Below are positions 10,031-62,765 of a stretch of DNA of 64,000 nt, piece by piece (within the stretch, counting starts at the first letter, position 1; each line of letters opens with the position of its first letter). Position numbers and translations under genes: made by a program. Location: contig NW_015168046.1 of NCBI RefSeq assembly GCF_001447785.1, positions 1,832,411 to 1,896,410 of the forward strand, read 5' to 3'. The notes below the pieces were generated by a model. It searched no databases. It saw only the letters and a program-made list of their open reading frames with translations, and was not told the DNA's origin. Origin of the DNA: Gekko japonicus (taxonomy: Eukaryota).

Positions 10031-10672
10031 AAAATAATAATAATAAGAGATTGGATTTATACTCCGCCCTTAACTACCCAAAGGAGTCTCAGAGTGGCTT
10101 ACAAACTCCTTTCCCTTCCCCTCCCCACAACAGACACCCTGTGAGGTAGGTGGGGCTGAGAGAGCTCTGACAGAAACTGCTCTTTTTCAAGAAGAGCTCT
10201 GCCAGATCTATGGCTTACCCAAGGTCATCCAGACAGGTGCAAATGGAGGAGTGGGGAATTGTTAGATCGTGCTAACAAAGACTCGGAGAGTGATTTCAGC
10301 TCAGTGATTCAGCTTTATTGAAGTAGTGAACAAACACTCAAACGCATTCAAAACCAGAACAGATTAACATTGGGAGCTAGGCTCCTTTTAAACATTCCCG
10401 GGCTAACGTAGCCACACCTATTTACAATAATCAACCACAGGATAAAGACCAATGGGAACTCTTCCTGCTTAGGGACCTTGCTTAGCAGTGATTGGTCGCT
10501 TATTCGGAACGACCAATAGGGTGCGAGAGTAGATGGAGCCCTGGCTGGCTCGAAGCTTAACATGGTAAGTGAATTAGACGATTCATGTAATACTTCCAGT
10601 ACATTACAGGAATCAAACCCGGTTCTCCCAGATTAGAGTCCATGCACTTAACCACTACACCAAATTGGCTCT
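10031..10672 (-). mobile_element. Squam3-type tRNA SINE inserted in L2, itself interrupted by a solo LTR
   Basis: Reverse complement begins AGAGCCAATTTGGTGTAGTGGTTAAG and aligns with the copy at 57756-58040. Confidence 0.85.
10260..10608 (-). mobile_element. Solo LTR
   Basis: TGT...ACA ends, perfect 5-bp TSD GGAAT, CCAAT boxes, minus-strand AATAAA. Confidence 0.85.
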
Positions 10673-12706
10673 GGAAGATCTGGACCTAGTATTACAAGCC
10701 ATAGCTGGATGGCCTAGGCTGAGGTGACTGAAATTGAATCCAATGAAGATGGAGGTCCTGTGCCTGAGCTGCAGCAGTCAAGGGTTAGGGATCCCACTAG
10801 TGACCTTCGATGGGGTGCCACTGGTGCTAGCATCAGTGGCTAGGAGTCTGGAAGTGCTCTTGGATGCCTCTTTAACGATGGAGGCCCAGGTAGCAGCCAC
10901 TGCCAAGTTGGCCTTTTAGCATCTTCAGCTGATTAGGCAATTGGTTCTCTTCCTTGAACATGACAACTTGGCAACAGTGATCTATGCAATGGCCACCTCA
11001 AGACTAGACTACTGTAACACTCTCTACGTGGGGCTGCCCTTGTCCCAAATCTGGAAGCTCCAGCTAGTGCAGAATGCAGCAGCCAGGCTGTTATTGGGCC
11101 TCCTTCTTAGAGAGCACATTCAGCCTTCACTGAAAGCACTGCACTGACTACCTATAGCATACTGGGTTTGCTTCAAGGTGCTGGTTCTTACCTATAAAGC
11201 CCTATATGGCCAGGGGCCTGAGGGATCACCTTTCCTCATATGTTACCCAGAGAGTACTGCGGGTCAGGCTCACAGAACCTTCTTCTTCTCCCCCCTGGCA
11301 TGAAAGATGCCAGGCTGGCCACAACCAGGGCTAGAGCCTTTTCCATGGCAGCTCCGCTTTGGTGGAACGAGCTCCCCAAGGACATCAGGGCCCTGCGGGA
11401 TTTATTAAAATTCCGCAGAGGCTTTAAGATGGAGCTCTTCTGCCAAGCATTCAAGAGTCCACACTAAATAATTTACCATCTAGCTGAATACTACGCCCTA
11501 CTCTCCACTCTTGGCCACCGGCTTATACCCATATGAAAGAACTCAGTCCCTAAGGAGCCTGACACCAGCTGCTGTTTTCCCTATGGTGGATGTTAAGACA
11601 GTTCCACTATCTTATGTGAGTTGTTTTTTAAATGGTTTGTTTGATTTTAAAATGTTAAATTATTATATTGTTTTATTGTCTTATTGCTTATAATGCCTAT
11701 AGCCTTGTTAGCCGCCCTGAGCCTGCCCTGATGGGGAGGGCGGGATACAAATCAAATAAATAAATAAATAAACTTTTCCTGTATTGAGAGAGAAAGGAGA
11801 GGATCCTCTTCCACTGCACAAAATGCCAAGCTAGATCTCATGGGCCTTGCATAGCCAAAGTCATGTGGGACGAGTGGCTGTAATAAAGAGGGGAATTAAG
11901 TGAGATTGCATGGGAAAAGCTCACTGAATCCAACCAAAGGACACTTAATTTTTCTTAAGAATCAGCTCCAGTTTCCACCAACTTCCCTCTCGTGATGAAA
12001 CCCACTGAGTTCCCCTGAAATTTTGCTGTTGGGGATCAACAGTCCCTAAGGAATAAAAAGCAAAGTCGAGGTCTGCAATGGGAGAGAGAATTTGACAGAA
12101 ATCACTCCCCTACCCTAACAAAACTTAAGGGCCCTTTGGAGTGTGGTTGCCTGTAGGTCTCAATTTTCCATGTAGTTATAGTATACTACATGTGCTTTTC
12201 CAAGTAGGAAAGAGAAAGTAGTGGTCAAATGGTTGCTTGAGAATTTCAAGCAGTTGCTAAGCACCAGGAGAGATTAAGAAAAAGAGCTAAGTAAGAGTTA
12301 GGCATACAGGCATGTATCCATTTATGTCTCTCTACAAGTCTCCTCCCATTGAAAAGATCTGCATTGGATAGCAATATTTAAAAAGTCATATCATGCAATT
12401 AAAATCATATTGAGGCAAATAAGGCATACAACAGCTAAAACAGAAAAAATTCATAACTAATATATACACCTCAACCTATGCCATTTACTGCTATCTCAAA
12501 AAGAGATCCTATTGTTATCCAATTAACTTAGACATTTCACAAGCTCTCCCTAGTTACTTCTGAGTAGATGCTTTTCTCCTTTAATTGCTGTATTAACAAC
12601 TTTAGTGTAATACTTAATGTTTGTACCTAGAAGGTAATACTAAAGATCAGCAACAAGTGTTAGCACCACATGAACCTGCCTGATACTGAACCAGACCATT
12701 GGCCCA

Positions 12707-13830
12707 TTCATAGAATCATAGTGTTGGAAGGGGCCATACCGGGGTTAAAGTCTCTGTCATCTGCTGATTTATGTATAGAGCCAATTTTTAATTTTTACTG
12801 TATTATATTTTAGTCTTTTAAATTGTTGTATATGCTGTAAGCTGCCCTGAGCCCACTTGTGGGGTAGATTGGGATATAAATCAAATAAATAAATAAATAA
12901 ATCTTCTCTTTGTTCTAGTACCTTTTTTCATACAGGACACATTTTATCTCAATGTTTTCTCATGTGAAGCTGAGTTGTATAGACCCAAATTAGGAACATC
13001 TCAGGAAGTTACATAGAAAGCAAGTATGATTCTGTTTTTGTAAAGAGAATGGATTGGGAGAAAGGCCAGATTTTAAGAGTAGGACTATGTGCACACTGAT
13101 GTTACATGGATTTGTAGTTCTGAGAAGCAGAATGCTAAATCTGAATAAGGATAATAGTTCTCCTTAGTATTATCTGAAAAACAACTGGTGATACTGCAAT
13201 CCAGGATCAAACATTTTACTCCAGTCCCACTCACCCTTTTCTTTAACTTCCTGATTGCTTTAGCTTTTATTCTGCTTTCTTATGTTGTAATTCCAATTTG
13301 ACTTTATATGGATTTTGTATTCTCTGATCTGTAATTAACCTGACTTCCTACTGTCTGTATGTGTGTGTGCATGCGCCAATAAAGACTTTTCTGAAGAAGA
13401 TTGCTTTAGCACCTTGAATATTTTATGGAAAAGAAAAACCATATTCAGCTTTTCAAAGGGTTGATTTTGTTCTAGATAAAGTGCTTACTGCTGCTTTCAG
13501 CAGGGGAAAAATACAACTGATGGAAAGCATCTAGTCCAATGCCCTGCTTAATGCAGGAGAAGCCTAGAGCATCCCTGACAAGTGTTTGTCCAGCCACTGC
13601 TCAAAGACTGCCAGTGAGGGGAAGCTCACCACCTCCCTCAGCCGCTGATTACACTGTTGCACAACTCTTACTGTAAAAAAAGTTTTCCCTAATATCCAGC
13701 CAGTACCTTCCAGTCCTTAATTTAAACCCTTTCTTGTGAGTCCTGTCCTCTGCTGCCAACAGGAACAGCTCCCTGCCCTCCTCTAAGTGACAGCCCTTCA
13801 AATACTTCAAGAGAGCAATCATGTCTCCTC
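12707..13830 (-). mobile_element. CR1 3' fragment split at GGGGCCATAC|CATCTAGTCC by a ~790-bp insert
   Basis: TCATAGAATCATAG tail at 12707; CR1 3' UTR and ORF2 end resume at 13528. Confidence 0.7.
12741..12902 (+). mobile_element. L2 3' tail
   Basis: TGTAAGCTGCCCTGAGCCC...GGGATATAAA(TAAA)n. Confidence 0.75.
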
Positions 13831-16368: not shown

Positions 16369-18456
16369 CATTGATCCAATGACCATTAAAAAAAAAATCT
16401 CTAACTTCTGCTCAGAGCGGTGGTGGGAAATGAACACTAGCAGTGGAGGGCTGGTATGTCTAGTCTGTCACAAATCTCATTGATTTCAGTTGGCTGAAAT
16501 TAGAGTAACTGCATGAGATTGCACTGCTAATCTTTGAGAATTGCCTACATGGTTACGATAGTACCAATCTCCATCCTCTATTTTATATGTTAATGTATTC
16601 CATGTATTGTGTCTGAATTCCACCTGTCTCTGTATGTAGACCCGTGTCAATGCAGTGCTAGTAGATGTTCATAGATCTGTGCAGTAAGGCTCCAATATGT
16701 CATTCTGACTCAGAAAAGGCAATTATTCTGAATTATACTATAGAGGAGAAAACAGTCTGTACAGTGTTTATGCACATGCACTGTGAACATATTTTTATTA
16801 TACTTCTAACTCCCCTCTCTTCTACCTTAGAAGTGGTGTCCTGTATAAGATTCCCAAGAGGTCTTCTATCCAGCCACTCCAGATGTGCTTAATTTCAGCA
16901 TTGTTGTGTATCATGTGCCTTCCATAATCTGAGAGCATATTGTCAACGCCAGCACTTTCAGCAAGACTAGTCACTTATTTAGACAGAAAGAACCCTCATT
17001 CCTGATATTTCTTTCTTGCCAAACTGGCAACCAGAGTGTTGAAATCTGACTGCCCCAACCATCTGTTTTGGACGTCTTCATGCAGCACGATGTCCACAGA
17101 GCCCATAGCAAAAATCTCTGGACTGAGTTCTGCCTTTTATTTTATTAGCATCAATATTTTCAGGCATCCCTTGGTGTCCACTTTGACAGACTCCAATCTC
17201 AAAAACATCAGAAGAGAGGTGCCAGATGAAGATAACAAAGTGAAAAACCTTTTGTAGAAAAGGGAGCTCCATTTCTTCCAAGAGCATAACAAAATGTTAT
17301 GTAGACTAACACAATTCCAGTTTATGGTTTTGGAAAAGCCATAAAGACTGCATCAGCAGTTTGCAGTGTTCAATACAGCATTAAGGGAGCCAACAATTTG
17401 CTTAAATATGCCTGACACAGATGATATAGTGCTTAAAGGCCAATAGAGTGGCTTTATATTCAGTGCAAGCTCTAAAATGTAAATCAAGCTGCATTTTCTT
17501 ATCATCTACTTTAGGTGCAGTGCCAGAGCCCAAATTCTAAATTACAATATCTTGAAGAGCTTTTTTTTGCCATCAGAGGGGAAAAGGGAGACTGTAACTA
17601 CATAATAGCTATATTGTTGAACAGCATAATTGAATAATAGATGGAAAATATTATTAAAGTGGATAACAGACCAGAATAAGTGTTCTGGGAAGCCACCTTT
17701 AGATCCATTATTGCCACCAATGAGGATGAATCCTATTTCTTGGCGTCTACAGGCCAAATTTTCAAATGGTATAAATGGAGACACATCATCTAAAAGTGCT
17801 AACATTTGCATCTGCTGAAAAATCTGTACAGTTTATTAAGTCTACATTTTGTATTTTCTTTTCATTGGCTTTACATATTTACCCAGGAGTCATTTAGGAG
17901 GGGGTCAGGGGTAAATAGCGGACAACTAGTCCTTTCTATTGTCAGTATGTCCAACACTCGATAGCTGTTAAAATGCTGTTGAACATCTTTCAAACAAATG
18001 CTCTGGGTATATGGGAGGAAACAATATGAATTTACACAAAAATAAAAGAGAAGAGTTTCTGGCCTTAGTTCTAGAGAGCTTTGTGAAGTTTTTCTTTAGT
18101 CCACCCTTGGTTGTCATTATTTACATTGGTCTCTACCTTTTCTCCAAGGAGCTCAAGACAACATGCACGGTTCCACACACACTCTTCATCCTATCCAATA
18201 TCTAGGTTAGGCCAAATTACTTAGGGTCATCCAGTGATATTAATATAGTAATAAGGAACCTGCATCATAGATCCAGCCTTGAAGCAGCTGCTGCCACTTC
18301 TCTGCTGGAACACAAAAACATCTAGTTTTGGCAGATCTCCTGGGGGGAGGTAACTTGGACTCCAAGGACCGGCATCTAAAGGCACATGATCTCCAAAACC
18401 AGCTCCTGCTTGATACTATCGCAGGGCATTCCTCAGCACAGTTTGAAGGGACATTT

Positions 18457-19382
18457 TGGTGGTGGAAAGTGCCATCAAGTCACAGCCGACTTATAGCGAC
18501 CCTTCATGGGGTTTTCAAGGCAAGATATGTTCATGGGTGGTTTATTTATTTTATTTATTTATTTAACATTCGATTTAGTATCCCTCTCGAATCCCTTGGC
18601 TAGGGGTCTCTGAGCGGCTTACAGGTTTGGTGGTGCTAATCACCATTTTTCCCTAACTAGGGCCACAATGTATAGGGGGATGGGACAACCTACTGGCACC
18701 CCCCTATGGTGGTTGTTGTTGCTCTTTCCATCGGCTTGGCTTGGCTCGGGTCGGGTCTCTGGACTGGCGGGTGTTCTTTTCCGGCGTTCGGTGGTGGCTT
18801 CTCTTCCTCTTGAGGCGTGCGGCTCCGCCTGCTTCCGGCCCGGCAACGTCCCTTCCGGTTCCGCTGGGCTGGTGCTTGGCGTCCAAGCACGCTCCTTCTC
18901 CTTTAACGGCAGCTTCGGTGTATTCTTCTCTCGGCCACCAGGGATCGCTCGATGTGCTCCTTCAATCGCGCCCGTCTGCTGCCGCAATGCCACGCCACCA
19001 GGCCGTCTGCACCGAGTCGGTGTTCACCTCCGTCGCCGCCGTCGCCGTCTTTCCAACCAACCATACAGGGTGCCCCCCACCCTTCTAAGGGTGGGTACCC
19101 ATTTATCTACTTGCAATTAGGTTGCTTTCAAAACCGCTGGGTGGGTGGGAGCTGGGACGAAGGTCGAGAGCTCACCTCGACCACGGTGGTACTCAAACAG
19201 CCATAGTGGCTGCTCGGTTGATGTTACAAAGCAGGCGTTTAACTGCCTGCGCCATTGTCTGTCTCTGGATAGCTACCCTGGACTTCCATGATGGTTTCCC
19301 ATCCAAGTACTAATTTGGGTTTACCCTGCTTAGCTTCTGAGATCTGACAAGATAGAGCAAGCATGGGCCATCCAGGTCAGGG
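18457..19382 (-). mobile_element. 5S rRNA-derived SINE (5S-Sauria-like), interrupted by composite SINE A
   Basis: Reverse complement of 19290-19382 gives CCCTGACCTGGATGG...AGATCTCAGAAGCTAAGCAGGG...TTAGTACTTGGATGGGA, matching the 5S internal control region. The body resumes at 18457-18540. Confidence 0.8.
18541..19254 (-). mobile_element. Composite SINE copy A: tRNA/Sauria-type head, variable GC core, L2-type tail
   Basis: The head (TGGCGCAGGCAG...GTGAGCTC...CCCAGCTCCC..CCCAGCGG...AAGTAGATAAATGGGTACC) and 3' part (CATTGTGGCCCTAGTTAGG...TGTAAGCCGCTC...(TAAA)n) align with 39209-39902; the core 18702-19067 does not. Confidence 0.8.
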
Positions 19383-19750
19383 AAAAGGGACATTATAGGG
19401 ATAAGGAAAAACTGGACTCAGAGGAGATACATCTAGCACAGTCCCTTCCAGGGGTCATTTCGAGCAGGAAAGGGCAGGAACGGCGTTACTATAAGTAAGC
19501 TCCTCCCCCTTCCTTTCCCTTCGCCTCACCTCCAAGCGGGGTGAAGGGAAAGGGGGGGAGAAAAAGGGAATCCAGGACTTCTTCTGCCTGACAGAGGGGC
19601 CAGAGCGCCAGCCCCTTTGACAGGCAGAAGTGCCTGGGATCCATTCCTTCCCCCCCTCCTTTCCCATCACCTCACCTCCAAGTGGCAATTTGCCTTCCCT
19701 TCAATGATGGGAGCCTGCCACCCCCCCTGCAACCGGGGAGGATCATTATA

Positions 19751-29219: not shown

Positions 29220-30131
29220 TCAGTTTAAAAACTGCTCTACCACCTTTTTGATTTTAAGCACCAGCAGCCTGGTTCCTTCTCGGGACAAGTGGAAACCGTC
29301 TCTTTTGTACAGCTCCCTCTTGTTCCAAAAAGCATCCCAGTGCCTAACAAACTTGAACCCTTCCCCCCTACACCATCGTCTCATCCACGCATTGAGACTC
29401 CTGATCTGTGCCTGTCTCTCTGGCCCTGCACGTGGAATAGGTAGCTCTTCTGAGAAGGCTACCTTGGAGGTCCTGGCCCTGAGTTTCCTGCCTAGCAGCC
29501 TAAATTTTTCCTCCAGGACCTCACAACTGCATTTCCCCACATTGTTGGTGCCAACATGTACCACAACCACTGGCTCCTCCCCAGCACTATCTACCACCCT
29601 ACCTAGGTTAAGCATAATGTCCGCTACCTTCACACCAGGCAGCCAAGTCACCATACAGTGAGTACGAATGTTCGCCAACCGGCTGCCTACCTGCATAAGG
29701 ATCAAATCACCAACTACCAAGAGCCCCCTTCCCACCCTGCCCAGGGATGGTTCCTTGGTGCGAAAGGATACCCGCTCACCANNNNNNNNNNNNNNNNNNN
29801 NNNNNNNNNNNNNNNNNNNNNNNNNNNNNNNNNNNNNNNNNNNNNNNNNNNNNNNNNNNNNNNNNNNNNNNNNNNNGGGACTGCCAGATCCAGAGTGGGA
29901 CATATCTAACAAGTCCCCAAGAGTCTTTTCTGTGCGCCTAACTGACTGTCTCTGCTTCTCCAGGTCAGCCACCTTGGCCTCAAGGGAGCAAACATGTTCC
30001 CTGGGAACCAGGAGCTCCTTGCACCGAGCACACACCCAAGACTTCTGTCCAGTGGGCAGATAGTCACACATGTGACACTCCGTGCAAAACACTGGATAGC
30101 CCCCAACTCCCTGCTGGCATTCTGGCTTCAT
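29220..30131 (-). pseudogene. CR1 ORF1 esterase-type protein (contains assembly gap)
   Basis: Open frame apart from the N-run; SGNH blocks GDL (normally GDS), GTN and D-x-x-H. Confidence 0.85.
29782..29876. other. Assembly gap (95 N)
   Basis: Run of n in the sequence. Confidence 1.
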
Positions 30132-30276
30132 AATTGCTTTAAAATAATAATTATACATAATCCCCCTTTTAAAACCCTTTGTATTTATGTGGTTCCCTTG
30201 TAGAAGTCTACTTATCTTACTGGGAACCGAAGGAGATTAGGGCACTGGCTTTCTGGCTCTTCCTGGGCTTCTTACA

Positions 30277-37709: not shown

Positions 37710-38944
37710 ATATAAATGAAACAAAGTATGCAGGAAGGAACATCACTCTGTATGTGTAACTGGTGAAAAGAAATGGCATTTTTCAAAAATTCACTAATGC
37801 AAGGCTGATGTTTAACTAACGTTGTCCTTCAGGATGTATTTCTTCCCTAAAGTTCAAAATTCAGAGAAAAATACGTTCTAAAACTCATGCCTGAAGTATG
37901 TGATAACAGATCAAAGAACCTTCCTTTATTGCAATATTTTCATCCCTGTGGAACAGAATAACGTTGGACTTTGCCTTTTGTTTGAAATCTTTACCTTTTA
38001 ATAAGTGAACTTTTGAAATTACCTCAGCGAACAAAGGTCCTCTTTCACAGTTAATCTTTTAACCCTTCAGGTTCAACTGGTATAGGCCAGAGGAGAATGC
38101 CACCGTGTTTTCACTGAACTTTTTACCCTTTGAAAAAAATGGGACAAGTGTAAAGTTCATATAGTGAGCAAGAGGTCTCTAGTGGGTATTTCTGGTATTA
38201 TTAACTTCCTGACCTCAGATAATTAAAAGGGAACAGAGAAGGCAGTATAGACTAAAACTCAACTTTGAACTTTTAACCTCTCTTGGGAAAGTATTTTGTG
38301 TACAAATAGCATACACACTAAAGCCTTGGGTTATTAACTTTCTATCACCCTTGGAAACAAAATAATATTAGCAGAACTAGTGTATCAGTTTAAAATAATT
38401 CTATTTCTGGGGATTGGTTTTTGTTTGCATTAACATTGAGACTCATAATTTTCAGCCAAAAGAATATAAGCAGTAGCCTGTTACCAAGTACCAGAGCCTA
38501 CTTGTGGGTATAGGCAAAACTGTTATGATGGGGGGAGGGATCAAACAGCACCCCAATCTATTGCATGTCTCCTTAAATCAATAACGAGGTGTTGTTATTT
38601 TTTAATGAAAAGCATTCTCAAGCAGCTGCAGAGGCAGAGGCGAATAGGCAGCATGATTAGGGTTGCCAGGTTCTATTTTTCCCCTAGTGGGGAAATTTGA
38701 GGAGTGGCATGCTGGGAGGGTGAGGGGCTGTCCCCAAGATGATGATGTCACACAGAGTGACATCACTTCAGGGATGCAGCGCCGTGTGTGCATCCCCTTG
38801 CTTTTCCCCAACCATTTAAAGGGAACCTTCCCTTTAAAGCAGCCCCCACTTCAAAAGAGCAGGCTCTGCACATGCCTGCCCTGTAAGTGGGGAGCAGCCC
38901 CTGCTTCAAGAGAGTGGGCGTCGTGTGCACCTGCCCTGCAACCT

Positions 38945-39068
38945 GGTGGCCCCACTGGTGGGCCTCCTGATGGCACCTGGTACTTTTGGCCACTGTGTGA
39001 CACAGAGCGTTGGACTGGATGGGCCATTGGCCTGATCCAACATTGGCTTCTCTTATGTTCTTATGTTC
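38945..39068 (+). mobile_element. CR1 3'-end fragment
   Basis: GTTGGACTGGATGGGCCATTGGCCTGATCCAAC stem-loop and (TTCTTATG)n tail. Confidence 0.8.
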
Positions 39069-39208
39069 AGCCTGTGAGATCACCACTTGCAGGGCAAGTG
39101 CTAGCGGCCCCCACTTCAAAAGAGCGGGTGCCACTCGCACCTGCCCTGTGAGCCGCAAGATCGCCACTTGTAGGGCAAGTGCTTGTGGTGTTCACTCGTT
39201 TTAAGTGG

Positions 39209-39866
39209 TGCGGTGGCGCAGGCAGCTTAAGCACCTGCTAGTAACATCAATAGCGAACAGCCATAATGGCTGTTCGAATCCCCACCGCAGCCGGAGTGAG
39301 CTCCCGGCCCTCAGTCCCAGCTCCCGCCAACCCAGCGGCTCGAAAAATAACATTAAGTAGAGAAATGGGTACCTGCCTTAGAGGCAGGGGGCACCCTCCT
39401 CCTGGTTCCGTGCCAGGAGGGCTAACGGTGGTGGCGGCGGCGGCAACGGGAGAGGCAAGAGAGAGGCGGCAGTGAGAAAGGCGGCGAGGAAGAACAATGG
39501 CAGTCCGACGAACCGTGGAGGTAACATCGGATGGAGGCGGGGATGGACGACGCAGCTGCGAGGCGGCGCGGCGCGGCTGGAGCCTGATGGGACGAATAGC
39601 CGACGCCGCAGTCCAACAAGCAGCGTGCGCCAACGAAAGGATCCATCAAGAAGCCCGCCGATGATCGCCAAACTACCCGGAGCACCGAGACTACGCCTGG
39701 AGCCGCCGAGAGTGAGGAAGAAGAGAGAAAGCCGCCGTCTGGGTGCCGCTAGGTAACCCCCCCACACACCCCATTGTGGCCTTAGTTAGGTTTGACTACA
39801 GATGTAGTCTAAATGTAAACCGCTCTGAGACCCATTAGGGGTCATGAGCGGTATAGAAATCACATG

Positions 39867-39901
<35 letters not shown>

Positions 39902-39902
39902 A
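39209..39902 (+). mobile_element. Composite SINE copy B: tRNA/Sauria-type head, variable GC core, L2-type tail
   Basis: A-box-like TGGCGCAGGCAG (39214), B-box GTTCGAATCC (39272-39281), Sauria-like body, long (TAAA)n tail, probable TSD AAGTGG (39203-39208 / 39901-39906). Confidence 0.85.
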
Positions 39903-40251
39903 GTGGGAGCCACTCACATTTGCCCTGCAAGCGGTGATCTCGTGGCTTGTAGGGCAGACATGGGCAGCCCCTGTTTTCAAAGAGTAGGCACTGCATGTGC
40001 CTGCCCTGCAAGCGGTGAGATCACTGCATGCAGGGCAGGTGTGGGTGGCCCCTGCCAACAACTGTTGGGGGTGGGGCTTCCCCCACCGGCCAGCTGGCCA
40101 GCTTCTGGGAGCAGCCCTAAAACTCAGGGATCCACCGCCCCTACCTGGGTGCTGGCATCCCTAAGCTTGATCCTTTTCATTTCAGCCAGTTATCCATTTA
40201 AAATTACCTTCAGTAGCTTTTCTTTTCTTATGTTGAGGAAAAGACACCAGC

Positions 40252-40465
40252 TAGGGTTGCCAAGTCTGGGTTGGAAAATACCTGGAAACTTTGGGGGTGG
40301 ATCCAGGAGAGGTCAGGGTTTAGGGAGGGGCCTCAGCATGGTACAATGCCACAGAGTCCACCCTTCATAGCAGCCATTTTCTCCAGGGGAGCTGATCTCT
40401 GTCAGCTGGAAATCAATTGTAAAAGCGGGAGATCCCCAGGCCCCACCTGGAGGCTGGCAACCCTA
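40252..40465. mobile_element. hAT MITE
   Basis: TIR TAGGGTTGCCA/TGGCAACCCTA; perfect 8-bp TSD ACACCAGC. Confidence 0.92.
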
Positions 40466-42466: not shown

Positions 42467-42886
42467 GGCCCCTGCCACACAGGGGGAAATTGCTGCGGGC
42501 AAAGTGCGGCTTTTGAAAGCCGCACCAAAAGAGACACGCGGCGGCAGGATCACACAGATCCCCTGAGCCGCCGCGCAGTTGCTCCCCGGCATGATCAGAT
42601 GCCGTGGGGGAGCCACGGACGGGAGCGCAAGGCAGCCGGCTGCACGTTGCTCCTCAATTGCTCCTGCAGACGGGTGCGCCGGCGATCCGACGGCCGCGCT
42701 TGATGCGGCGTGTCAGGTTGGTCCTGCTGTTTACTAGGTTTATTTTTCGTGCGCATTTTAGGCCTAAAGGGACGGATTGGGGACAGGTGCACGCTGATTC
42801 CCAGATGTTGCGGTGAGATCGCGCCTGTTTGCTGCGCCCCCGATCCATCCCTCTTCCAGCCCAAAACCTCCCGTGTGACCGGGGCC
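42467..42886. mobile_element. PIF/Harbinger-type MITE, CpG-rich
   Basis: TIR GGCCCCTGCCACAC / GTGTGACCGGGGCC; inverted homologue of 59905-60348. Confidence 0.82.
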
Positions 42887-47669: not shown

Positions 47670-50600
47670 AGAAGAGGCAACCGTCGTTCCTGACGTTTCT
47701 GGGACACGATCTGCCGATCCTACAACAAATCTGGCCACATCACCCATGCCTGACGTTCCATGCACCAGGAATCCGCAGAGCTTCACACGGTGGCTGTTCG
47801 CCACCACCAGGTACTGAAATTGCCCCAAGACACCCCTGATAAGATTAAAGTAACCGTTTTGATAGAGGAGGCCCCCTGCGAAATGGAACTGTACACAGCT
47901 CTCCTCCATTTCCATCATTTCGGCAGAGACACTCTGAGGGCTCTGTCTGGGGGGGGGGGGGCTGGTTGAACCCAGTTGACTTTACCCTCCATGACTTCCA
48001 GAAGAACCCAGTGGCAGTTAAGGGGTCGGGCAAGTTCAGGATGCAATACCAGGACTTTGATAGACTGTTTGACCTGGTGGTGGTAGAAGGCCAGTTCACC
48101 AATCTTCTGGGACTGTCCTGGTTTGCGGTGTTGGAGTTCAAGGTGACGGGCATTCATAACGTACAGCCGACAGACTTTTACAGGGTGTGCAAGGAATTCC
48201 CAGCGGTCTTCAACAGCATGCTGGGGCATTACATGGGTCACCTGATCTCCCTCGACCTAGACCACTGCCCCCTATAGATGGAAGGCCTGAAGCTGGGACT
48301 GTCCTGGTTTGCGGCGTTGGAGTTCAAGGCGACGGGCATTCATAACGTACAGCCGACAGACTTTAACAGGGTGTGCAAGGAATTCCCAGCGGTCTTCAAC
48401 AGCATGCTGGGGCATTACATGGGTCCCCTGGTCTCCCTCGACCTAGACCCAGCAATCCGCCCTATCTGCATGAAGGCCTGGTGGGTCGCCGAGCCCCTGC
48501 ACCACCTCCTAGACAAAAAAGCACCGTGGGTTTGGGGCCCAACACATGCCGCTGCATTCTGGGCTGTGAATGACCTGCTGGTATCGAACACAGTCCTGGC
48601 ACACTTTGATGAGTCTCTTCCAGTCATCCTCGTGTGTGATGCTTCCCCATACGGGGTCGGGGCGGTCCTGGGCCACCAGCTGCCGGATGGCCGTGAGGTT
48701 CCTGTCACCTATTACTCAAGGACTCTCTGTTCGGCTGAGCGCAACTACGCTCAAATTGATAAGGAGGCCTTGGCAATCGTGGCTGGAGTAACAAAGTTCC
48801 ATGATTACCTCTATGGCCAGCCCTTCACTGTCCTCATGGACCATAAACCCCTCTTGGGTCTACTTGCTCCGGACCGCCAGACTCCTCAGATGCTGTCCAC
48901 AAGGGCAACTGGTCCATCTTCCTGGCTAGCTCCTCCACCGACCTAGAAAAGCGATGGGCCACGCTGACACCCTGAGCTGCCTTCCTCTGCCATCCTGTGA
49001 CCCGGACCTGGCTCCCACCCATCAGATCCTGCTGCTCAAGGATCTGCTCAACTGCCCCATCCAGGTCTTCGACATGCCCTGCCTCACAGCTCGGGATCAC
49101 CTGCTCTCCCGTGTCTTGGACTGGGTGGGGAGGGGGTGGCCCACCAGCCGGGTGGGCCTGGAATTTGCAGCATTCTCCTCCCGCCGGGATGAACTGTCGG
49201 CCCATAAGGGTTTTTTGTTGTAGGAAAGCCGGGTAGTTGTTCCCGCCCCACTGCAGCAGTGGGTACTAGCAGCCTTACATGAGACGCATCCCAGAATTGT
49301 CAAGATGAAAGCGCTCACACGCAGCTATGTATGGTGGCCAAACATGGACAGCGAGATCGAGGACTGTGTGCAGTGCTGTCAGACATGCCAGGAATCAGGG
49401 CTGGAGCCACCCAGGGCCCCAGTCAGGCCCTGGGAGTCATCACAGAAACCATGGGCCTGACTCCACCTTGACTTCGTGGGTCCGTTCCAGGAGCAAATCT
49501 TCTTTATACTGGTGGACTCTTATACCAAATGGCTGGAGGTGGTGCTGGTCCCCTCCACCTCATCCTGTGCCATGATCCATGCCCTATGGCGGATTTTCAG
49601 TACCCATGGTATTCCAGACACCTTAGTCACTGAAAACAGGACCGCATTCACATCGGCAGAATTCCAGGAATTCATAGAATACTATGCCATCAGACACATC
49701 CACTCCACACCCTTCCACCCTGCAACAAACGGCCAGGGAGAATGGATGGTGAGGACGACCAAGGAGTCCCTGTGCAGGTTAGCCAAGGGAGATTGGGAAT
49801 ATCACCTGGCTGCCTTCCTCTTTGGCCAGAGGATGACCCCGAACTCAACCACTGGCCACTGCCTAGCAGAACAACTCATGGGCCGGTGTCTCACCACACA
49901 CCTCGATCGACTACACCCCGACCGTGCTCCCGAGCACAGCATGGCCCCAGCCATTGAGGAAGCACCCTGTGGTTTCTTCCTGGGTGACCCCGTCTATGCC
50001 AGGAACTTCGCCCGGGGTCCCGCATGGCTACCCACCAGGATAATCCACATCACCAGTCCCCTGTCATATGAAGTGTCAACAGAAGATGGCCAACTGTTTC
50101 GCCGCCACATTGATCACCTCCACCACTGACTACTCCTGGCAGAGCAACAGACAGTGGAGGACAGTGAAGACAAGATGCTTAGCCCAGGATCCAGTGACGC
50201 CGAGGTGAACATGCCCAGCGATCAAGCACAAACCGGACTCAGCACACCAGCAACTGTGAATGGTGAAAACACCCCGGAGCCAGGCGTCACACCAGGACAC
50301 GAAAGCGAACTGACTCCTGCACTCACACCTGGGATCCCAGAGGGCACACCGGAGTCTGCTCCAGAATCGACAACCCTGCCGGCAATGCTACACCATTCCA
50401 CCTGGGAGTGGCGGAAGCCCGCACACTTGAAAGACTTTGTGTGCTAGCGGGTTCTGAACCTTGGGGGGAGGGGTGTTGTATATTAAGATAGACGACACAT
50501 GTGCTTGGGTTCGCACGTGGTCAGGTGAACAATTACAGCTTATGGTTCTATAACAATAGCGGGTGAGGATCCAAGAACTAGCCTATCGACCACCTCAGAT

Positions 50601-52781: not shown

Positions 52782-52889
52782 TAGAGTTGTTTTTTTTAAA
52801 AAAAATAAGAAATATTCTGAAGCTATGTTACCAAGTCTGTATACTGCTCTTTAGTTGTGTGTACTGAAACAAGGAGTATGCCATATGAA

Positions 52890-53096
52890 CTTGTGTGTGT
52901 GCTTACATGCTAGGAAGTCATGGCAACCTATGGCAACCCTTACTGGGGGTTTGTTTTTCAGAGAGATGGCTTGATAGTCTGCCTCTGCATCCCAAGCCCT
53001 GGTGTTCCTTGGAGGTCTCCCTTCCAATTATTTTCCAGGGTTTGCCCTGTTCTGAGATCTGATGAGATCAGGTTGCCCGAGCTATCCAGGTCAAGG
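52890..53096 (-). mobile_element. 5S rRNA-derived SINE
   Basis: Same family as 18457-19382 (TGAGATCTGATGAGATCAGG...ATCCAGGTCA). Confidence 0.7.
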
Positions 53097-57755: not shown

Positions 57756-58040
57756 GAGAGCCAGTTTGGTGTACTGGTTAGGAGCAAGGACTCTGGGAGA
57801 ACTGGGTTTGATTCCCCACTCCTCCACATGAACCCTGCTGGTGTGACCTTGGGTCTGTCATAAGTTCTTTCAGAGCTGTCCTCTCAAGAGCAGTTCTCGA
57901 AAGAGCTCTCTCAGCCCCACCTACCTCACAGGGTGTCTGTTGTGGGAGGGGAAGGGAAAGGAGATTGTAAACTGCTCTGAGACTCCTTTGGGTAGTGAAG
58001 GGCAGGGTATAAATCCAATCTCTTCTCTTCATCTTCTCTC
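57756..58040 (+). mobile_element. Squam3-type tRNA SINE, full length
   Basis: GAGAGCCAGTTTGGTGTA.TGGTTA head, GGTTTGATTCCCC B-box, L2-like 3' end and (TCT)n tail. Confidence 0.88.
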
Positions 58041-59904: not shown

Positions 59905-60348
59905 GGCCCCGGTCACACAGGAGGTTTAGGGCCGGAAGAGGGACGGATTGGGGGCGCAGCAAAAGGGCGCGATCCCATCGCAATATCTGGGAAGCAGGGT
60001 GCACCCGTCCCCGATCCGGCCCTTCAGACCGAAAATCTGCAGTGAAAACAAACCACCTACAGAGGTGGACTTACCAGAAAGGCTGCGGCAAGCGCGGCCG
60101 TGGGATTGCCGGCGCGTCCTTCTGCCGGCGCATCCGAGGCTCCTGGCTGAACTGCGCATGCGCAGTCATGCGCAGCCGGCTGCCTCGGTCTCCTGTCGGT
60201 GGCTTCCTCCCCAGCATCTGATCGTGCCGGGGAGCAACTGCACGGCGGCTCAGGGGATCTGTGTGATCCCGCCGCCGCGTGTCTCTTTTGGTGCGGCTCT
60301 GAATAGCCGCACTTTGGCCGTGTTTTTTTCTGCCGTGTGGCAGGGGCC
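59905..60348. mobile_element. PIF/Harbinger-type MITE, CpG-rich
   Basis: TIR GGCCCCGGTCACAC / GTGTGGCAGGGGCC; TAA TSD on both sides. Confidence 0.9.
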
Positions 60349-61239
60349 TAAGAATACTTTCCTGGAAGAAAGCACCATTGAATAAATTGGGACTTACCAA
60401 GTAGGCCTGCTTAGGATTGCTCACTATATCCAACTGTCATGTACATCTTTTGAAAAAACCTCTTTCTTACGATGCTTCCTGGATGATTCCCCATTTAACA
60501 GAGACACTAAAAATGGTTCAGAGGGCAGCTGTGTCAGCCTGCAGCAGAGTGGCTAGAGGTGGGTCAAGGAGCTCCTTGGAGACCAACAGGATTTTCAGGA
60601 TATGAACTTTTGAGAGCTAAGGTACCCTTTGTCAGCTAAAAATGTTAACATTCTATCAAGCAAGTGTAAAACCTGGATAAACAGATAGCGCTTAGTCATT
60701 TGAGGGATAATTATTATGTTAAAAAAACCCCTTATTCTTAGAAAATCCATGTCCTTTGACCTTAACTGTGTGTGCGTGTGCCATGAACAGGGTATAGCGA
60801 CAGGGGCTGGAGGCTGCTGCTAGGTCATAGTTGATTCCCTCCTGATTATATTTTTCTACTTGATTACCAAGCACAGTCTTATATTTCAATGAGCCAAATT
60901 CATCTTGGATGTAACTCGGTTTGAAATAAATGAAAGCTCCTGGCCCATTAACTTGGGCTGAGATAAAGTCAAGGGCAAAAGGATATCCTTATGCAAAGCA
61001 GCATCAATGCAGATATGCTCCTAATCAGTTTGGATTAGGAGGAGGAGATCCCTGTCCTCATAGCACCTTCATGCTGATCTTTCACTGCTTCATTTTTCTG
61101 TACATCAGTATATAGATTTAGTTCTTCCCCAGAGAAGGTGTAATGTTATCTTCTAATGAAGTGATAGGACATCATTAAAGATGCAAATCTCTTAGTATTC
61201 TGTAGACTATGATAGATTAAAAAATTGTTATGAGGAATT

Positions 61240-62047: not shown

Positions 62048-62765
62048 TCTATATATCTAATAGCGAAGGCGCCCCCTGCGTGTGGATATCTAAATCTGCA
62101 CATCAGGGGCACCTGGGGGGCAGGGAGATTTTCCTGCACACTTGGGGCAGTCCCCAGGTGTGCACAAAAATCTAAAAAGTTGAAAAAATATAGGGGGAAT
62201 ATTTAAATCCCCCCAAAAGTAAAAGGGCATTTCCTGTGCATGTGCAGGGAATGCTCTGGGAAGTCTGCAGTGGCCCAGCGGCTGGAATCCGCTCAGGCCT
62301 CGTTGCCAGAGCCAAGGTGGGGAGAGAGGAGGAGGAGATCGGTCGCGGAGTCAAGGGGGGGAGGAGACCAGCAGAGGGGGAAGAAGCAGGGGGGAGGTTG
62401 GAATGGCCCAGTGGCTGGAAGCCTCTCAGGCTGTGCCGCTGACGCCAGGAAGGGAGAGAGGGAGGGGGCAGGAGAAGGTTTGGCAGGCTGGCAGCTGTAA
62501 GCAGCTCAGCCCTCGCCGCTGCGGGGGGAGGGAGAAAGTTTGGCGAGCCGAGCTCAGGCCTCCCGCTGCCACGGCTGGGGGAAACCGAGTTCAGGCCTCT
62601 TGCCGCCGGTGCTAGGAGGGAGAAGGCTTGGAGAGAAGGCTTAGAGAGGCGTGGGCCTCACTGTGGGTGCCGGGGCAGGGGAGATTCACCTGCGGCTGCT
62701 TCCTTCTCCTCATGTGGAGCTTCTCCTCCCCCCATCCCCGCGAGTATCGCAGGTCCCCCTTCTTG
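62048..62765 (+). mobile_element. Non-autonomous Helitron
   Basis: A|TCTATATATCTAA 5' end; hairpin CCCGCGAGTATCGCAGG about 10 nt before CTTG|T (CTAG variant); GC-rich repetitive interior. Confidence 0.68.

What the first reader, a model, noticed from the sequence alone, without database searches (positions are those of the whole stretch)
39209..39902. Composite SINE family with a fixed frame and a non-homologous ~350-bp core (copy B; copy A at 18541-19254, minus)
Seen: two ~700-bp elements 20 kb apart share, in order, a Pol III-type head (TGGCGCAGGCAG A-box; GTTCGAATCC B-box in B, degenerate in A), a block GTGAGCTC..CCCAGCTCCC..CCCAGCGG..AAGTAGA.AAATGGGTACC, the boundary GGGGGCACCC, a core, the boundary GGGTGCC..TAGGT, the box CATTGTGGCCYTAGTTAGG, and an L2-like end TGTAARCCGCTC.GAGACCC...(TAAA)n. 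The cores (A 18702-19067, B 39397-39740) have similar length and composition but I cannot align them. Known: that head block resembles Sauria/Squam1 SINEs, which normally end in a BovB-derived tail, whereas (TAAA)n ends belong to L2. Inference: a possibly undescribed L2-mobilised Pol III RNA whose frame is conserved while the middle module is swapped or hypervariable, like a cassette-carrying retroposon.
Basis: partly seen in the sequence, partly recalled or inferred. Interest (0 to 1): 0.9.

Follow-up and report, generated by a model that had tools for sequence, protein, structure and literature searches.

The report
Long gecko SINE with unalignable middle
Two copies of a roughly 700-base mobile element in a gecko genome have nearly identical control boxes at both ends, while their 350-base CpG-rich, T-poor middles cannot be aligned; this is an unusual variant of a known kind of retroposon, and how the middle diverged is not settled.

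Summary
Each copy is one discrete insertion. B splits an 81-bp tandem array by exactly 698 bp and has the target-site duplication AAGTGG. A splits a 5S-headed SINE.

The frames are 71-83% identical. The cores do not beat shuffled controls (z about 1.5). A simulation shows that homologous cores at 55% identity or more would almost always be detected.

Both cores are compositional extremes of the window: T 9%, GC about 64%, CpG observed/expected 1.0-1.15 against 0.28 for the window. Both are cryptically simple and share a gradient from G-rich to A/C-rich. They are not coding, not a VNTR and not convincingly structured.

My best reading is a long Sauria-type-head SINE with an L2-type tail. The two copies come from deeply split subfamilies, and the middle is constrained in length and composition but not in sequence. 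The main rival is module replacement, for example by a piece of the partner L2's 5'UTR, for which other LINE clades give published precedent. Two copies cannot separate these readings.

The scan has noted what looks like the same family twice on other DNA of this genome (s1-824300, s1-818687). Whether Dfam or Repbase already holds it was not testable.

The parts
39203..39208 (+). Copy B, left target-site duplication AAGTGG
   Evidence: Read directly. The same hexamer follows the tail at 39901-39906. The host 81-bp array is offset by 698 bp across the insert.
39209..39289 (+). Copy B, tRNA-like Pol III head: 8-bp acceptor-like stem TGCGGTGG/CCACCGCA, A box at 39214-39225, B box GTTCGAATCC at 39272-39281
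   Evidence: Sequence, fold, hairpins. ARAGORN and Rfam do not call a tRNA here.
39290..39396 (+). Copy B, conserved post-head domain (Sauria-type by recollection), ending in the hairpin CCTGCCT/AGGCAGG and the boundary GGGGGCACCC
   Evidence: Nine exact runs of 7-12 nt are shared with copy A. Compensatory pair changes relative to A.
39397..39740 (+). Copy B, middle module (344 nt): T 9-10%, G 38-39%, CpG observed/expected 1.15, cryptically simple
   Evidence: Not alignable to core A.
39741..39866 (+). Copy B, 3' frame: GGGTGCC..TAGGT (39741-39754), box CATTGTGGCCTTAGTTAGG (39772-39790), hairpin GACTAC/GTAGTC (39794-39809), L2-type box (39814-39833) and stem-loop CCGCTC...GAGCGG (39820-39851)
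39867..39902 (+). Copy B, perfect (TAAA)9 tail
   Evidence: TRF reports 9.0 copies at 100% match.
39901..39906 (+). Copy B, right target-site duplication AAGTGG (overlaps the last A's of the tail)
19068..19254 (-). Copy A, head and conserved domain. It is 5'-truncated, the B box has decayed (GTTTGAGTAC), and there is a TTTT at element position 122
18702..19067 (-). Copy A, middle module (366 nt): T 9%, G 34-35%, CpG observed/expected 1.02, cryptically simple
18566..18701 (-). Copy A, 3' frame: GGGTGCC at 18701-18695, box CATTGTGGCCCTAGTTAGG at 18670-18652, hairpin TGGTG/CACCA, L2-type box at 18623-18604
18541..18565 (-). Copy A, (TAAA)n tail: 6 units, 90% match
19255..19375 (-). Left half of the host element of copy A: a 5S-rRNA-derived SINE head. 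Not part of the composite element
   Evidence: Rfam 5S_rRNA 35.7 bits over model positions 1-120. Aligns with the other 5S SINE in the window.
18440..18540 (-). Right half of the host element of copy A: continuation of the same 5S-headed SINE body
   Evidence: GGGTCGCTATAAGTCGGCTGTGACTT aligns with the body of the 5S SINE at 52880-53095.

Best explanation
Both loci are complete retroposed copies of a low-copy, unusually long (about 690-715 nt) SINE-type element of a gecko. The element has four parts:
- a tRNA-like head with Pol III A and B boxes;
- a conserved post-head domain of the Sauria/Squam1 type;
- a roughly 350-nt middle that resembles a CpG island and is T-poor;
- a roughly 150-nt 3' region ending in an L2-type stem-loop and (TAAA)n.

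Inferred: Pol III transcribes the element from the internal boxes, and an L2-clade LINE reverse transcriptase recognises the 3' stem-loop and microsatellite and copies the RNA at a nicked target.

Shown: each copy, middle included, went in as one piece.

Inferred: the two copies descend from source-gene lineages that split long ago. Selection on the source genes kept the promoter boxes, the 3' boxes and several hairpins (the hairpins through compensatory changes). Everything else turned over: the linkers in the 3' frame and above all the middle. The middle is held to a length (344-366 nt) and a composition (T about 9%, G-rich then A/C-rich, CpG-rich) but not to a sequence. Its cryptic simplicity suggests slippage-type turnover as the accelerator. 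No exchange of cassettes is needed.
For: Discrete insertions:
- B displaces the 81-bp host array by 698 bp, which equals 692 nt plus the 6-bp target-site duplication.
- A splits a 5S-headed SINE whose two halves flank it.

Frame against middle:
- There are nine exact runs of 7-12 nt in the head and four in the 3' frame. The only exact run in the core is CGGCGGC.
- The frames are 71-83% identical, while the core scores z about 1.5.
- Simulated homologues at 55% identity or more score z>=4 in 59 of 60 trials.

Selection on structure:
- Hairpin CCTGCCT/AGGCAGG in B corresponds to CCCACCCT/AGGGTGGG in A, with two pairs changed on both sides.
- GCCGG..CCGGC in B corresponds to GGTCGAGG..TCTCGACC in A (C-G changed to T-A).
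- GACTAC/GTAGTC in B corresponds to TGGTG/CACCA in A, at the same place with a wholly different sequence.
- The short linkers of the 3' frame are as unalignable as the core, so the core is not unique in having turned over.

Shared constraints on the middle:
- The two cores are the most T-poor and A-poor 300-nt windows of the 64 kb, and have the highest CpG observed/expected among GC-rich windows.
- They share the same gradient in G, then A and C.
- Local short-motif repeats are in excess (z 3.4-5.0) in both.
- There is a faint, non-significant residual colinearity (z 1.3-2.3).

L2-type end: the last 55-115 nt match other (TAAA)n- and (CTT)n-tailed ends in the window. Gecko Squam3 SINEs with an L2-like 3' region use the same tails (PMC7983390).

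Youth of the copies: the boxes are nearly identical, B has a perfect (TAAA)9 tail and an intact duplication, and the CpGs are undecayed.
Against: - Only two copies could be studied, so a split into old subfamilies is inferred and not shown.
- A neutral distance of at least about 0.87 substitutions per site, which is needed to reach 50% identity or less at this composition, would take some 330 Myr at 0.0013 per site per Myr (rate quoted in PMC13295347). That is older than squamates, so an extra accelerator or a replacement is required. Slippage is suggested by the data but not demonstrated.
- The unpaired parts of the head are about 80% conserved. Under this reading nearly the whole 190-nt head must be under selection.
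- Pol III transcription is not shown: no tRNA is called, and no RNA data were available.
- The reason for the T-poor composition is unexplained. The absence of TTTT in B is not significant at this composition.
Confidence: 0.45

Rival explanations
1. The middle is replaced as a module. It may be a fragment of the partner L2's 5'UTR, so that the element is head + conserved domain + internally deleted L2 (5'UTR piece + 3'UTR). Or it may have been exchanged by reverse-transcriptase template switching or recombination at the conserved boundaries. Subfamilies that ride different L2 lineages would then carry unrelated middles of similar size and composition.
For: - Bipartite bodies made of the 5'UTR and 3'UTR of the partner LINE are documented for many SINEs of the RTE and Vingi clades, along with swapped parts between related SINEs (Kojima 2018, PMC5786205).
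- Homology is lost abruptly within a few bases of GGGGGCACCC and regained at GGGTGCC.
- The two boundaries are a perfect 7-nt inverted repeat.
- The time needed for neutral drift is implausibly long (see the best explanation).
- CpG-island-like composition is what LINE 5' promoters such as the L1 5'UTR look like. This is established knowledge for L1 and an inference for L2.
- Unchecked notes of this scan report L2-tailed chimeras elsewhere in this genome.
Against: - No L2 5'UTR was available to compare. Neither core matches anything else in the window.
- The one LINE ORF1 remnant in the window (29223-30158, -) has no T-poor, CpG-rich region upstream, but it is an old fragment.
- The published bipartite cases concern RTE and Vingi, not L2.
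- The linkers inside the 3' frame have also turned over, which a single exchange of the middle does not explain.
- The nearly equal lengths, the shared gradient and the shared (GGC)n motif near the 5' end of both cores fit common descent at least as well.
Confidence: 0.33
2. The element is a cassette-carrying retroposon. The middles are pieces of host transcripts or CpG islands captured between fixed frame sequences, and they differ from copy to copy.
For: The composition is like a CpG island. Unchecked notes of this scan report gene fragments captured in SINEs of this genome.
Against: - The core reading frames have no Pfam family.
- Three word-indexed searches found no homologue.
- An exhaustive search of 1.84 billion representatives gave one marginal low-complexity hit at E=1.9e-4.
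- The reading frames of A and B are unrelated, and their openness follows from T- and A-poverty.
- Random capture would not give the same length, the same extreme T-poverty and the same gradient twice.
Confidence: 0.04
3. The cores are one hypermutated sequence: a single ancestral middle diversified by an RNA- or cDNA-level editing process (for example ADAR-type A-to-G change in a long hairpin, followed by compensatory U-to-C change). This would deplete U and erase the alignment.
For: - T is extremely depleted, with G and C in excess.
- The G-rich 5' part and C-rich 3' part can pair.
- Collapsing A with another base raises the alignment z to 2.4-2.9.
Against: - Those z values come from eight tests against mononucleotide shuffles and are not significant after correction.
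- The purine/pyrimidine collapse gives z 1.1.
- Fold energies of the cores are only 1.1-2.5 sd below shuffles.
- A remains at 26-28%.
Confidence: 0.08
4. The pattern is a coincidence or an artefact: two ordinary SINEs that each received an unrelated nested insertion, or a misassembly.
For: None beyond the bare fact that the middles differ.
Against: - The break points are identical at both boundaries, and the sizes are almost the same (344 and 366 nt).
- The same extreme composition occurs twice.
- The middles have no target-site duplications or terminal features.
- Each whole element is bounded by an interrupted host repeat.
- The scan noted two further look-alike loci of 666 and 738 nt (unchecked).
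Confidence: 0.02

Closest known systems
Sauria / Squam1 SINE of squamates (Piskurek et al. 2006; Kosushkin et al. 2006)
   Same: A tRNA-like Pol III head is followed by a conserved block (GTGAGCTC...CCCAGCT...AGC.G...GTAGA..AAT.GGTACC plus a hairpin). I recall this block as the Sauria domain. This is a recollection, not tested against a reference sequence here.
   Different: Ordinary Sauria SINEs are 256-359 nt, end in (ACCTTT)n and depend on Bov-B/RTE (PMC13295347). This element is 692-714 nt, carries a 350-nt CpG-rich middle and ends in an L2-type stem-loop and (TAAA)n.
Squam3 SINE (Vassetzky et al. 2021, PMC7983390)
   Same: It occurs in geckos, has an L2-like LINE-derived 3' region and (TAAA)n or (CTT)n tails, and shows few target-site duplications. 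Squam3-like ends in this window share the last 55-115 nt with this element.
   Different: Squam3 is 218-271 nt long and has a CORE/Ther1 central domain. It has no Sauria-type block and no long GC-rich middle.
SINEs with bipartite LINE-derived bodies (partner-LINE 5'UTR + 3'UTR; Kojima 2018, PMC5786205)
   Same: The architecture is head, an optional conserved domain, a middle of separate origin, and a LINE 3' end. Parts are known to be swapped between related families.
   Different: The documented cases are in the RTE and Vingi clades, and their middles align to known LINE 5'UTRs. Here no source of the middle is known, and the partner would be L2.
SVA composite retroposons of hominids
   Same: Both are composite non-autonomous retroposons with a GC- and CpG-rich, highly variable middle between conserved end modules.
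   Different: The SVA middle is a true VNTR of 35-50-bp units, and SVA is a Pol II transcript mobilised by L1 with poly(A). Here TRF finds no repeat unit in the cores, and the head is of the Pol III type.
rRNA expansion segments / cryptically simple regions (Hancock and Dover)
   Same: Both are GC-rich, cryptically simple stretches flanked by conserved sequence. Their sequence turns over quickly by slippage while length class and composition persist.
   Different: This is a different molecule and context, offered only as an analogy of process. The cores keep 26-28% A and show only weak evidence of conserved folding.

Membership tests
SINE (SINEBase / Kramerov and Vassetzky definition) | Head derived from a Pol III-transcribed RNA, with an internal promoter (A and B boxes for tRNA heads) | tested here: inconclusive
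   In B the B box GTTCGAATCC fits the consensus, the A box TGGCGCAGGCAG fits partly, and there is an 8-bp acceptor-like stem. ARAGORN finds no tRNA, and Rfam has no tRNA hit at E<=10. The B box of A has decayed.
SINE (SINEBase / Kramerov and Vassetzky definition) | LINE-derived 3' region and a simple-repeat tail | tested here: met
   The TGTAARCCGCTC.GAGACCC stem-loop and (TAAA)n are shared with four other retroposon ends in the window. TRF finds tails in both copies.
SINE (SINEBase / Kramerov and Vassetzky definition) | Dispersed, discrete insertions made through an RNA intermediate | tested here: met
   B has the 6-bp duplication and displaces an 81-bp array by 698 bp. A splits a 5S-headed SINE. 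A is 5'-truncated, as expected of target-primed reverse transcription.
SINE (SINEBase / Kramerov and Vassetzky definition) | Short length (about 100-600 nt) and no coding capacity | tested here: not met
   The copies are 692 and about 714 nt. Non-coding status is met: no Pfam family, no homologues, and the reading frames of A and B are unrelated. The length is above the usual range.
SINE (SINEBase / Kramerov and Vassetzky definition) | Repetitive: many copies per genome | not testable with these tools
   There are two copies in 64 kb. Two look-alike loci were noted by the scan elsewhere in the genome (unchecked).
Sauria / Squam1 SINE | Sauria conserved domain after the tRNA-like head | not testable with these tools
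No reference sequence could be obtained from a tool or a held paper. No ordinary copy is present in the window.
Sauria / Squam1 SINE | Bov-B/RTE-derived 3' end with an (ACCTTT)n tail, length about 260-360 nt | tested here: not met
   The tail is (TAAA)n with an L2-type stem-loop, and the length is about 700 nt. Compare PMC13295347 Table 4 and its supplement.
Squam3 SINE | CORE/Ther1 central domain, 218-271 nt, L2-like 3' region | tested here: not met
   Only the terminal 55-115 nt resemble the Squam3-like copies at 10048-10126 and 57906-58021. The length and head block differ (PMC7983390). The CORE domain itself was not compared with a reference.
Bipartite LINE-derived SINE body (partner 5'UTR + 3'UTR) | The middle aligns to the 5'UTR of the partner LINE | not testable with these tools
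   No full-length L2 of this genome is at hand. The window's LINE remnant shows no similar region.
SVA-like VNTR composite | The middle is built of tandem units that vary in number | tested here: not met
   At score 30, TRF finds only GCGGC x3 and CCGTCGCCG x2 inside the cores.

The most novel reading that the evidence does not exclude
The family is a modular retroposon. Its middle is a replaceable or actively diversified cassette, held between two complementary boundary sequences (GGCACCC / GGGTGCC). Different lineages carry unrelated middles of the same size and the same CpG-island-like, T-poor make-up. On this reading the middle works by composition rather than by sequence, for example by keeping source copies unmethylated and transcribed, or by letting Pol III run 700 nt.
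Probability: 0.3. Interest if true: 0.7.

Novelty: new variant of a known kind. Interest (0 to 1): 0.45.

Why it matters
SINE middles are usually either short and unremarkable or deeply conserved domains of unknown function. This family does the opposite. The ends and several hairpins are conserved, while a long middle keeps only its length and an extreme composition.

If a genome-wide set confirms this, the family would be a clean natural test of what a SINE body is for: sequence, structure or mere composition. It would also test whether CpG-island-like modules help source copies escape silencing, and whether L2-dependent SINEs borrow 5'UTR pieces from their partners as RTE-dependent SINEs do.

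On the practical side, the two frame profiles give a ready handle for annotating a repeat that library-based masking may split into unrelated pieces.

Tried and rejected
The tool said to go on with other tools, which I did.
- More copies by protein search: translated reading frames spanning core B, head plus core B, and core A gave no hit in the 5.8-billion-protein index, not even to themselves. The collection evidently does not hold such reading frames from this genome.
- Exhaustive HMMER search with the 124-aa sense frame of core B: one marginal hit (E=1.9e-4, five stretches in a 2970-aa protein), which I take for low complexity.
- More copies by DNA pattern: the 19-nt 3' box gave 4 metagenome contigs and 0 viral contigs. 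BLAST shows no similarity beyond the 19-24 nt seed, so these are chance matches.
- Known RNA families: Rfam finds nothing in either element at gathering or at E<=10 except chance-level hits. ARAGORN finds nothing.
- 5S-headed variant: I considered that the 5S rRNA-like sequence next to A might be a second head of the element. I rejected this because the same host SINE continues on the far side of A.
- Coding middle: no Pfam family, and no similarity between A and B at the protein level on either strand. The open frames are expected from 9% T or A.
- VNTR: rejected.
- Rod-like RNA: fold energies of the cores are only 1.1-2.5 sd below dinucleotide or block shuffles. The closing helix GGCACCC/GGGTGCC has probability 0.38 in A and 0 in B when the whole element is folded. 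This is inconclusive, not supported.
- Editing signature by collapsed alphabets: z is at most 2.9 over eight tests, which is not convincing.
- L2 5'UTR source inside the window: the region upstream of the ORF1-esterase remnant is AT-rich and CpG-free.
- Literature: no held paper mentions a Sauria-L2 class or a long CpG-rich gecko SINE. A reference Sauria sequence could not be recovered from the supplements.
Full report
**What is there**

Copy B lies on the + strand and copy A on the - strand.
- The 3' box CATTGTGGCCYTAGTTAGG occurs only at these two places in the window, against 0.06 matches expected. The block AAGTAGA.AAATGGGTACC also occurs only there, against 0.10 expected.
- The A-box-like TGGCGCAGGCAG matches exactly only there.
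- The terminal box TGTAARCCGCTC.GAGACCC is exact in both copies, and is also found with two mismatches in two other elements.
- A sensitive BLASTN of each copy against the window finds only the other copy and, for the last 70 nt or so, a few other retroposon ends. Profile searches agree.

**Both copies are single, discrete insertions**

B sits in a degenerate tandem array with an 81-bp period. Across B the register of that array jumps by 779 bp, which is 81 + 698. The hexamer AAGTGG stands both at 39203-39208 and directly after the tail at 39901-39906. So 692 nt of element plus 6 nt of duplication account for the whole offset. The middle therefore arrived together with the head and the tail.

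A is preceded by a complete 5S-rRNA-like sequence (Rfam 5S_rRNA, 35.7 bits, model positions 1-120). I first considered this a second head. However, the sequence after A's tail continues the body of the same kind of 5S-headed SINE that is present intact at about 52880-53095. A is thus nested in an older SINE. It lacks the first five bases or more of B's head, as 5'-truncated products of target-primed reverse transcription do. Its first TGGC may belong to the host or be junction microhomology.

**Frame against middle**

In optimised pairwise alignment the head (about 185 nt) is 83% identical and the 3' frame (about 130 nt) 71%. MAFFT gives 75% and 60%. Exact runs of 7-12 nt number nine in the head and four in the 3' frame. 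The only such run in the middle is CGGCGGC.

The middles (B 39397-39740, A 19067-18702) are not detectably related:
- Alignment scores are z 1.6 (global) and 1.2 (local) against dinucleotide shuffles.
- They are z 1.3-1.5 against shuffles that keep the compositional gradient, rising to 2.3 with a softer scoring scheme.
- nhmmer with one core does not find the other at E<=10.
- Shared 7- to 9-mers are at chance.

To learn what this blank means I mutated core B in silico with composition-matched substitutions and 2% indels. At 70-80% site identity the same test gives z 29-47, and at 60% it gives 14. At 55% it gives 9, with only 1 trial in 60 at or below 2. Only at 50% or less does it often fall to the observed level. 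The cores are at most about 50% identical, if they are homologous at all.

**What the middles have in common**

- Both have 9-10% T, 34-39% G, about 64% G+C and 63-65% purines.
- Their CpG observed/expected is 1.02 and 1.15. This compares with 0.35-0.6 in their own frames and 0.28 in the window.
- In a scan of all 300-nt windows they are the most T-poor (or A-poor on the other strand) places in the 64 kb. They also have the highest CpG ratio among GC-rich windows.
- Both start G-rich (40-43% G over the first two thirds) and end richer in A and C.
- Both are cryptically simple: short motifs recurring within 40 nt are in excess over dinucleotide shuffles at z 3.4-5.0. Yet TRF finds no repeat unit.

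**What the middles are not**

- The long open frames on both strands follow from the rarity of T or A. They have no Pfam family and no relatives in three indexed searches. One exhaustive search gave a single marginal low-complexity hit. They are unrelated between A and B.
- Rfam finds nothing.
- Predicted folding of the cores is only 1.1-2.5 sd better than shuffles.
- The boundaries GGCACCC and GGGTGCC are a perfect 7-nt inverted repeat in both copies. The helix they could form has probability 0.38 in A and 0 in B when the whole element is folded. I leave it as an observation.

**Selection on RNA structure in the frame**

Three hairpins stand at homologous places with changed sequence:
- CCTGCCT-TAG-AGGCAGG in B corresponds to CCCACCCT-TAGA-AGGGTGGG in A. 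Two pairs changed on both sides and one pair was added.
- GCCGG...CCGGC in B corresponds to GGTCGAGG...TCTCGACC in A, with one C-G pair changed to T-A.
- Between the 3' box and the L2 box, GACTAC-AGAT-GTAGTC in B corresponds to TGGTG-ATTAG-CACCA in A. The sequence is entirely different but the position is the same.

The short linkers of the 3' frame are also unalignable, although both versions of the linker after TAGGT are C-rich.

Frame and middle together therefore show one pattern. Boxes and stems are kept, and everything else is replaced. The near-identity of the boxes, the perfect (TAAA)9 tail and intact duplication of B, and the undecayed CpGs argue that both copies are fairly young. On this view most of the difference between them arose in their source lineages. 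A has since acquired a TTTT in its head and lost its B box through CG-to-TG changes, so it cannot itself be a source.

**How it most likely works**

Shown:
- It is a non-coding element of about 700 nt that inserts as a unit.
- It has short or no duplications and 5' truncation.
- It ends in a stem-loop and (TAAA)n of the same type as other L2-like ends in the window.

From the literature: gecko Squam3 SINEs with an L2-like 3' region carry (TAAA)n or (CTT)n tails and few duplications (PMC7983390). Ordinary Sauria SINEs are 256-359 nt long, with (ACCTTT)n tails and Bov-B as partner (PMC13295347).

Inferred: transcription by Pol III from the A and B boxes, and mobilisation by an L2-clade LINE.

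For the middle I commit, at moderate confidence, to rapid turnover within old source lineages. The constraint would be on length and composition, and slippage would be the likely accelerator.

The weak point is time. Reaching 50% identity or less at this composition needs about 0.87 substitutions per site or more. At 0.0013 per site per Myr (rate quoted in PMC13295347), that is roughly 330 Myr of separation if only the background rate acted. This figure is my own arithmetic.

That weakness is why module replacement stays a strong rival. Kojima (PMC5786205) showed that many SINE middles are pieces of the partner LINE's 5'UTR joined to its 3'UTR, and that related SINEs swap parts. LINE 5' regions are typically CpG-rich and are often non-homologous between lineages (known for L1). 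I could not test this. The only LINE remnant in the window, an ORF1 with a GDSL-esterase domain at 29223-30158, has an AT-rich, CpG-free upstream region.

**Comparison with what is known, and novelty**

The architecture of a tRNA-like head, a Sauria-type domain and an L2 end is, to my recollection, an existing class in the RepeatMasker/Dfam scheme. I could not verify this here, and the held papers do not mention it. The head block's likeness to Sauria/Squam1 is likewise a recollection, because no reference sequence was obtainable.

Three features go beyond the known kinds:
- the length, which is above the usual SINE range;
- the CpG-island-like, T-poor middle;
- the fact that this middle is unalignable between copies whose flanking boxes are almost identical.

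I rate it a new variant of a known kind. It may already sit in a repeat library.

The scan has noted look-alike loci of 738 and 666 nt on other pieces of this genome (s1-824300, s1-818687), described as having a roughly 350-nt CpG-rich or GC-rich middle. I could not see their sequences. If they are the same family, four sightings in about 49 Mb of windows read suggest a family of only a few hundred copies. This is a rough inference from unchecked notes.

**Limits**

- The protein-index route returned nothing.
- The metagenome matches to the 3' box were chance.
- All statements about subfamilies, age and mechanism therefore rest on two copies.

Noticed in passing
window 19255-19375 (-) with 18440-18540 (-); second copy at about 52880-53095 (-): There are two 5S-rRNA-headed SINEs, with Rfam 5S_rRNA at 35.7 and 35.3 bits, just under the gathering score of 38. 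Their body resembles the Deu-type domain (...GGGTYGCYATARGT.GGC..TGACTT...). The first one is split by copy A.
   Followed up: partly
window 38600-40400 (+): A degenerate tandem array with an 81-bp period, units 60-80% alike, hosts copy B. TRF misses it, but the repeat finder shows spacings of 81, 81 and 779. Long spurious open frames with the motif CPASGDL..CRA run through it.
   Followed up: partly
window 29223-30158 (-): An open frame with a GDSL-lipase/esterase domain (Pfam PF13472, E=4e-10), as in ORF1 of CR1/L2-type LINEs. It runs across the 95-N gap at 29782-29876. No intact reverse-transcriptase frame lies downstream, so it is an old LINE remnant.
   Followed up: partly
window 48278-50129 (+): Pieces of an LTR retrotransposon pol gene: RT-RNase H (PF17919, E=4e-32) and integrase core (PF00665, E=1e-11) in two separate open frames.
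   Followed up: no
window 10048-10126 (-) and 57906-58021 (+): Two SINE 3' ends of the Squam3/MIR-like kind (CCTACCTCACAGGGTGTCTGTTGTGGGGA...TGTAAGCC.CTCTGAGAC) with CTT-rich tails. Two further L2-type ends with (AAAT)n lie at 12815-12902 and 11706-11772.
   Followed up: partly
window 42476-42830: The only other CpG-island-like stretch of the window (GC about 62%, CpG observed/expected about 1.03). It overlaps a 158-aa open frame on the - strand with no Pfam family and may be a promoter or first exon.
   Followed up: no
window 19504-19690: Two adjacent imperfect palindromes (22-nt and 20-nt arms) give chance-level hits to plant miRNA-precursor families in Rfam. They look like a MITE-type or hairpin repeat next to the host SINE of copy A.
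   Followed up: partly
window 62276-62630 and 60051-60350: A G-rich (45% G, 12% T) stretch and an A-poor stretch rank next after the two cores in the composition scan. Their CpG ratio is lower (0.5 and 0.9), and neither is similar to the cores.
   Followed up: no
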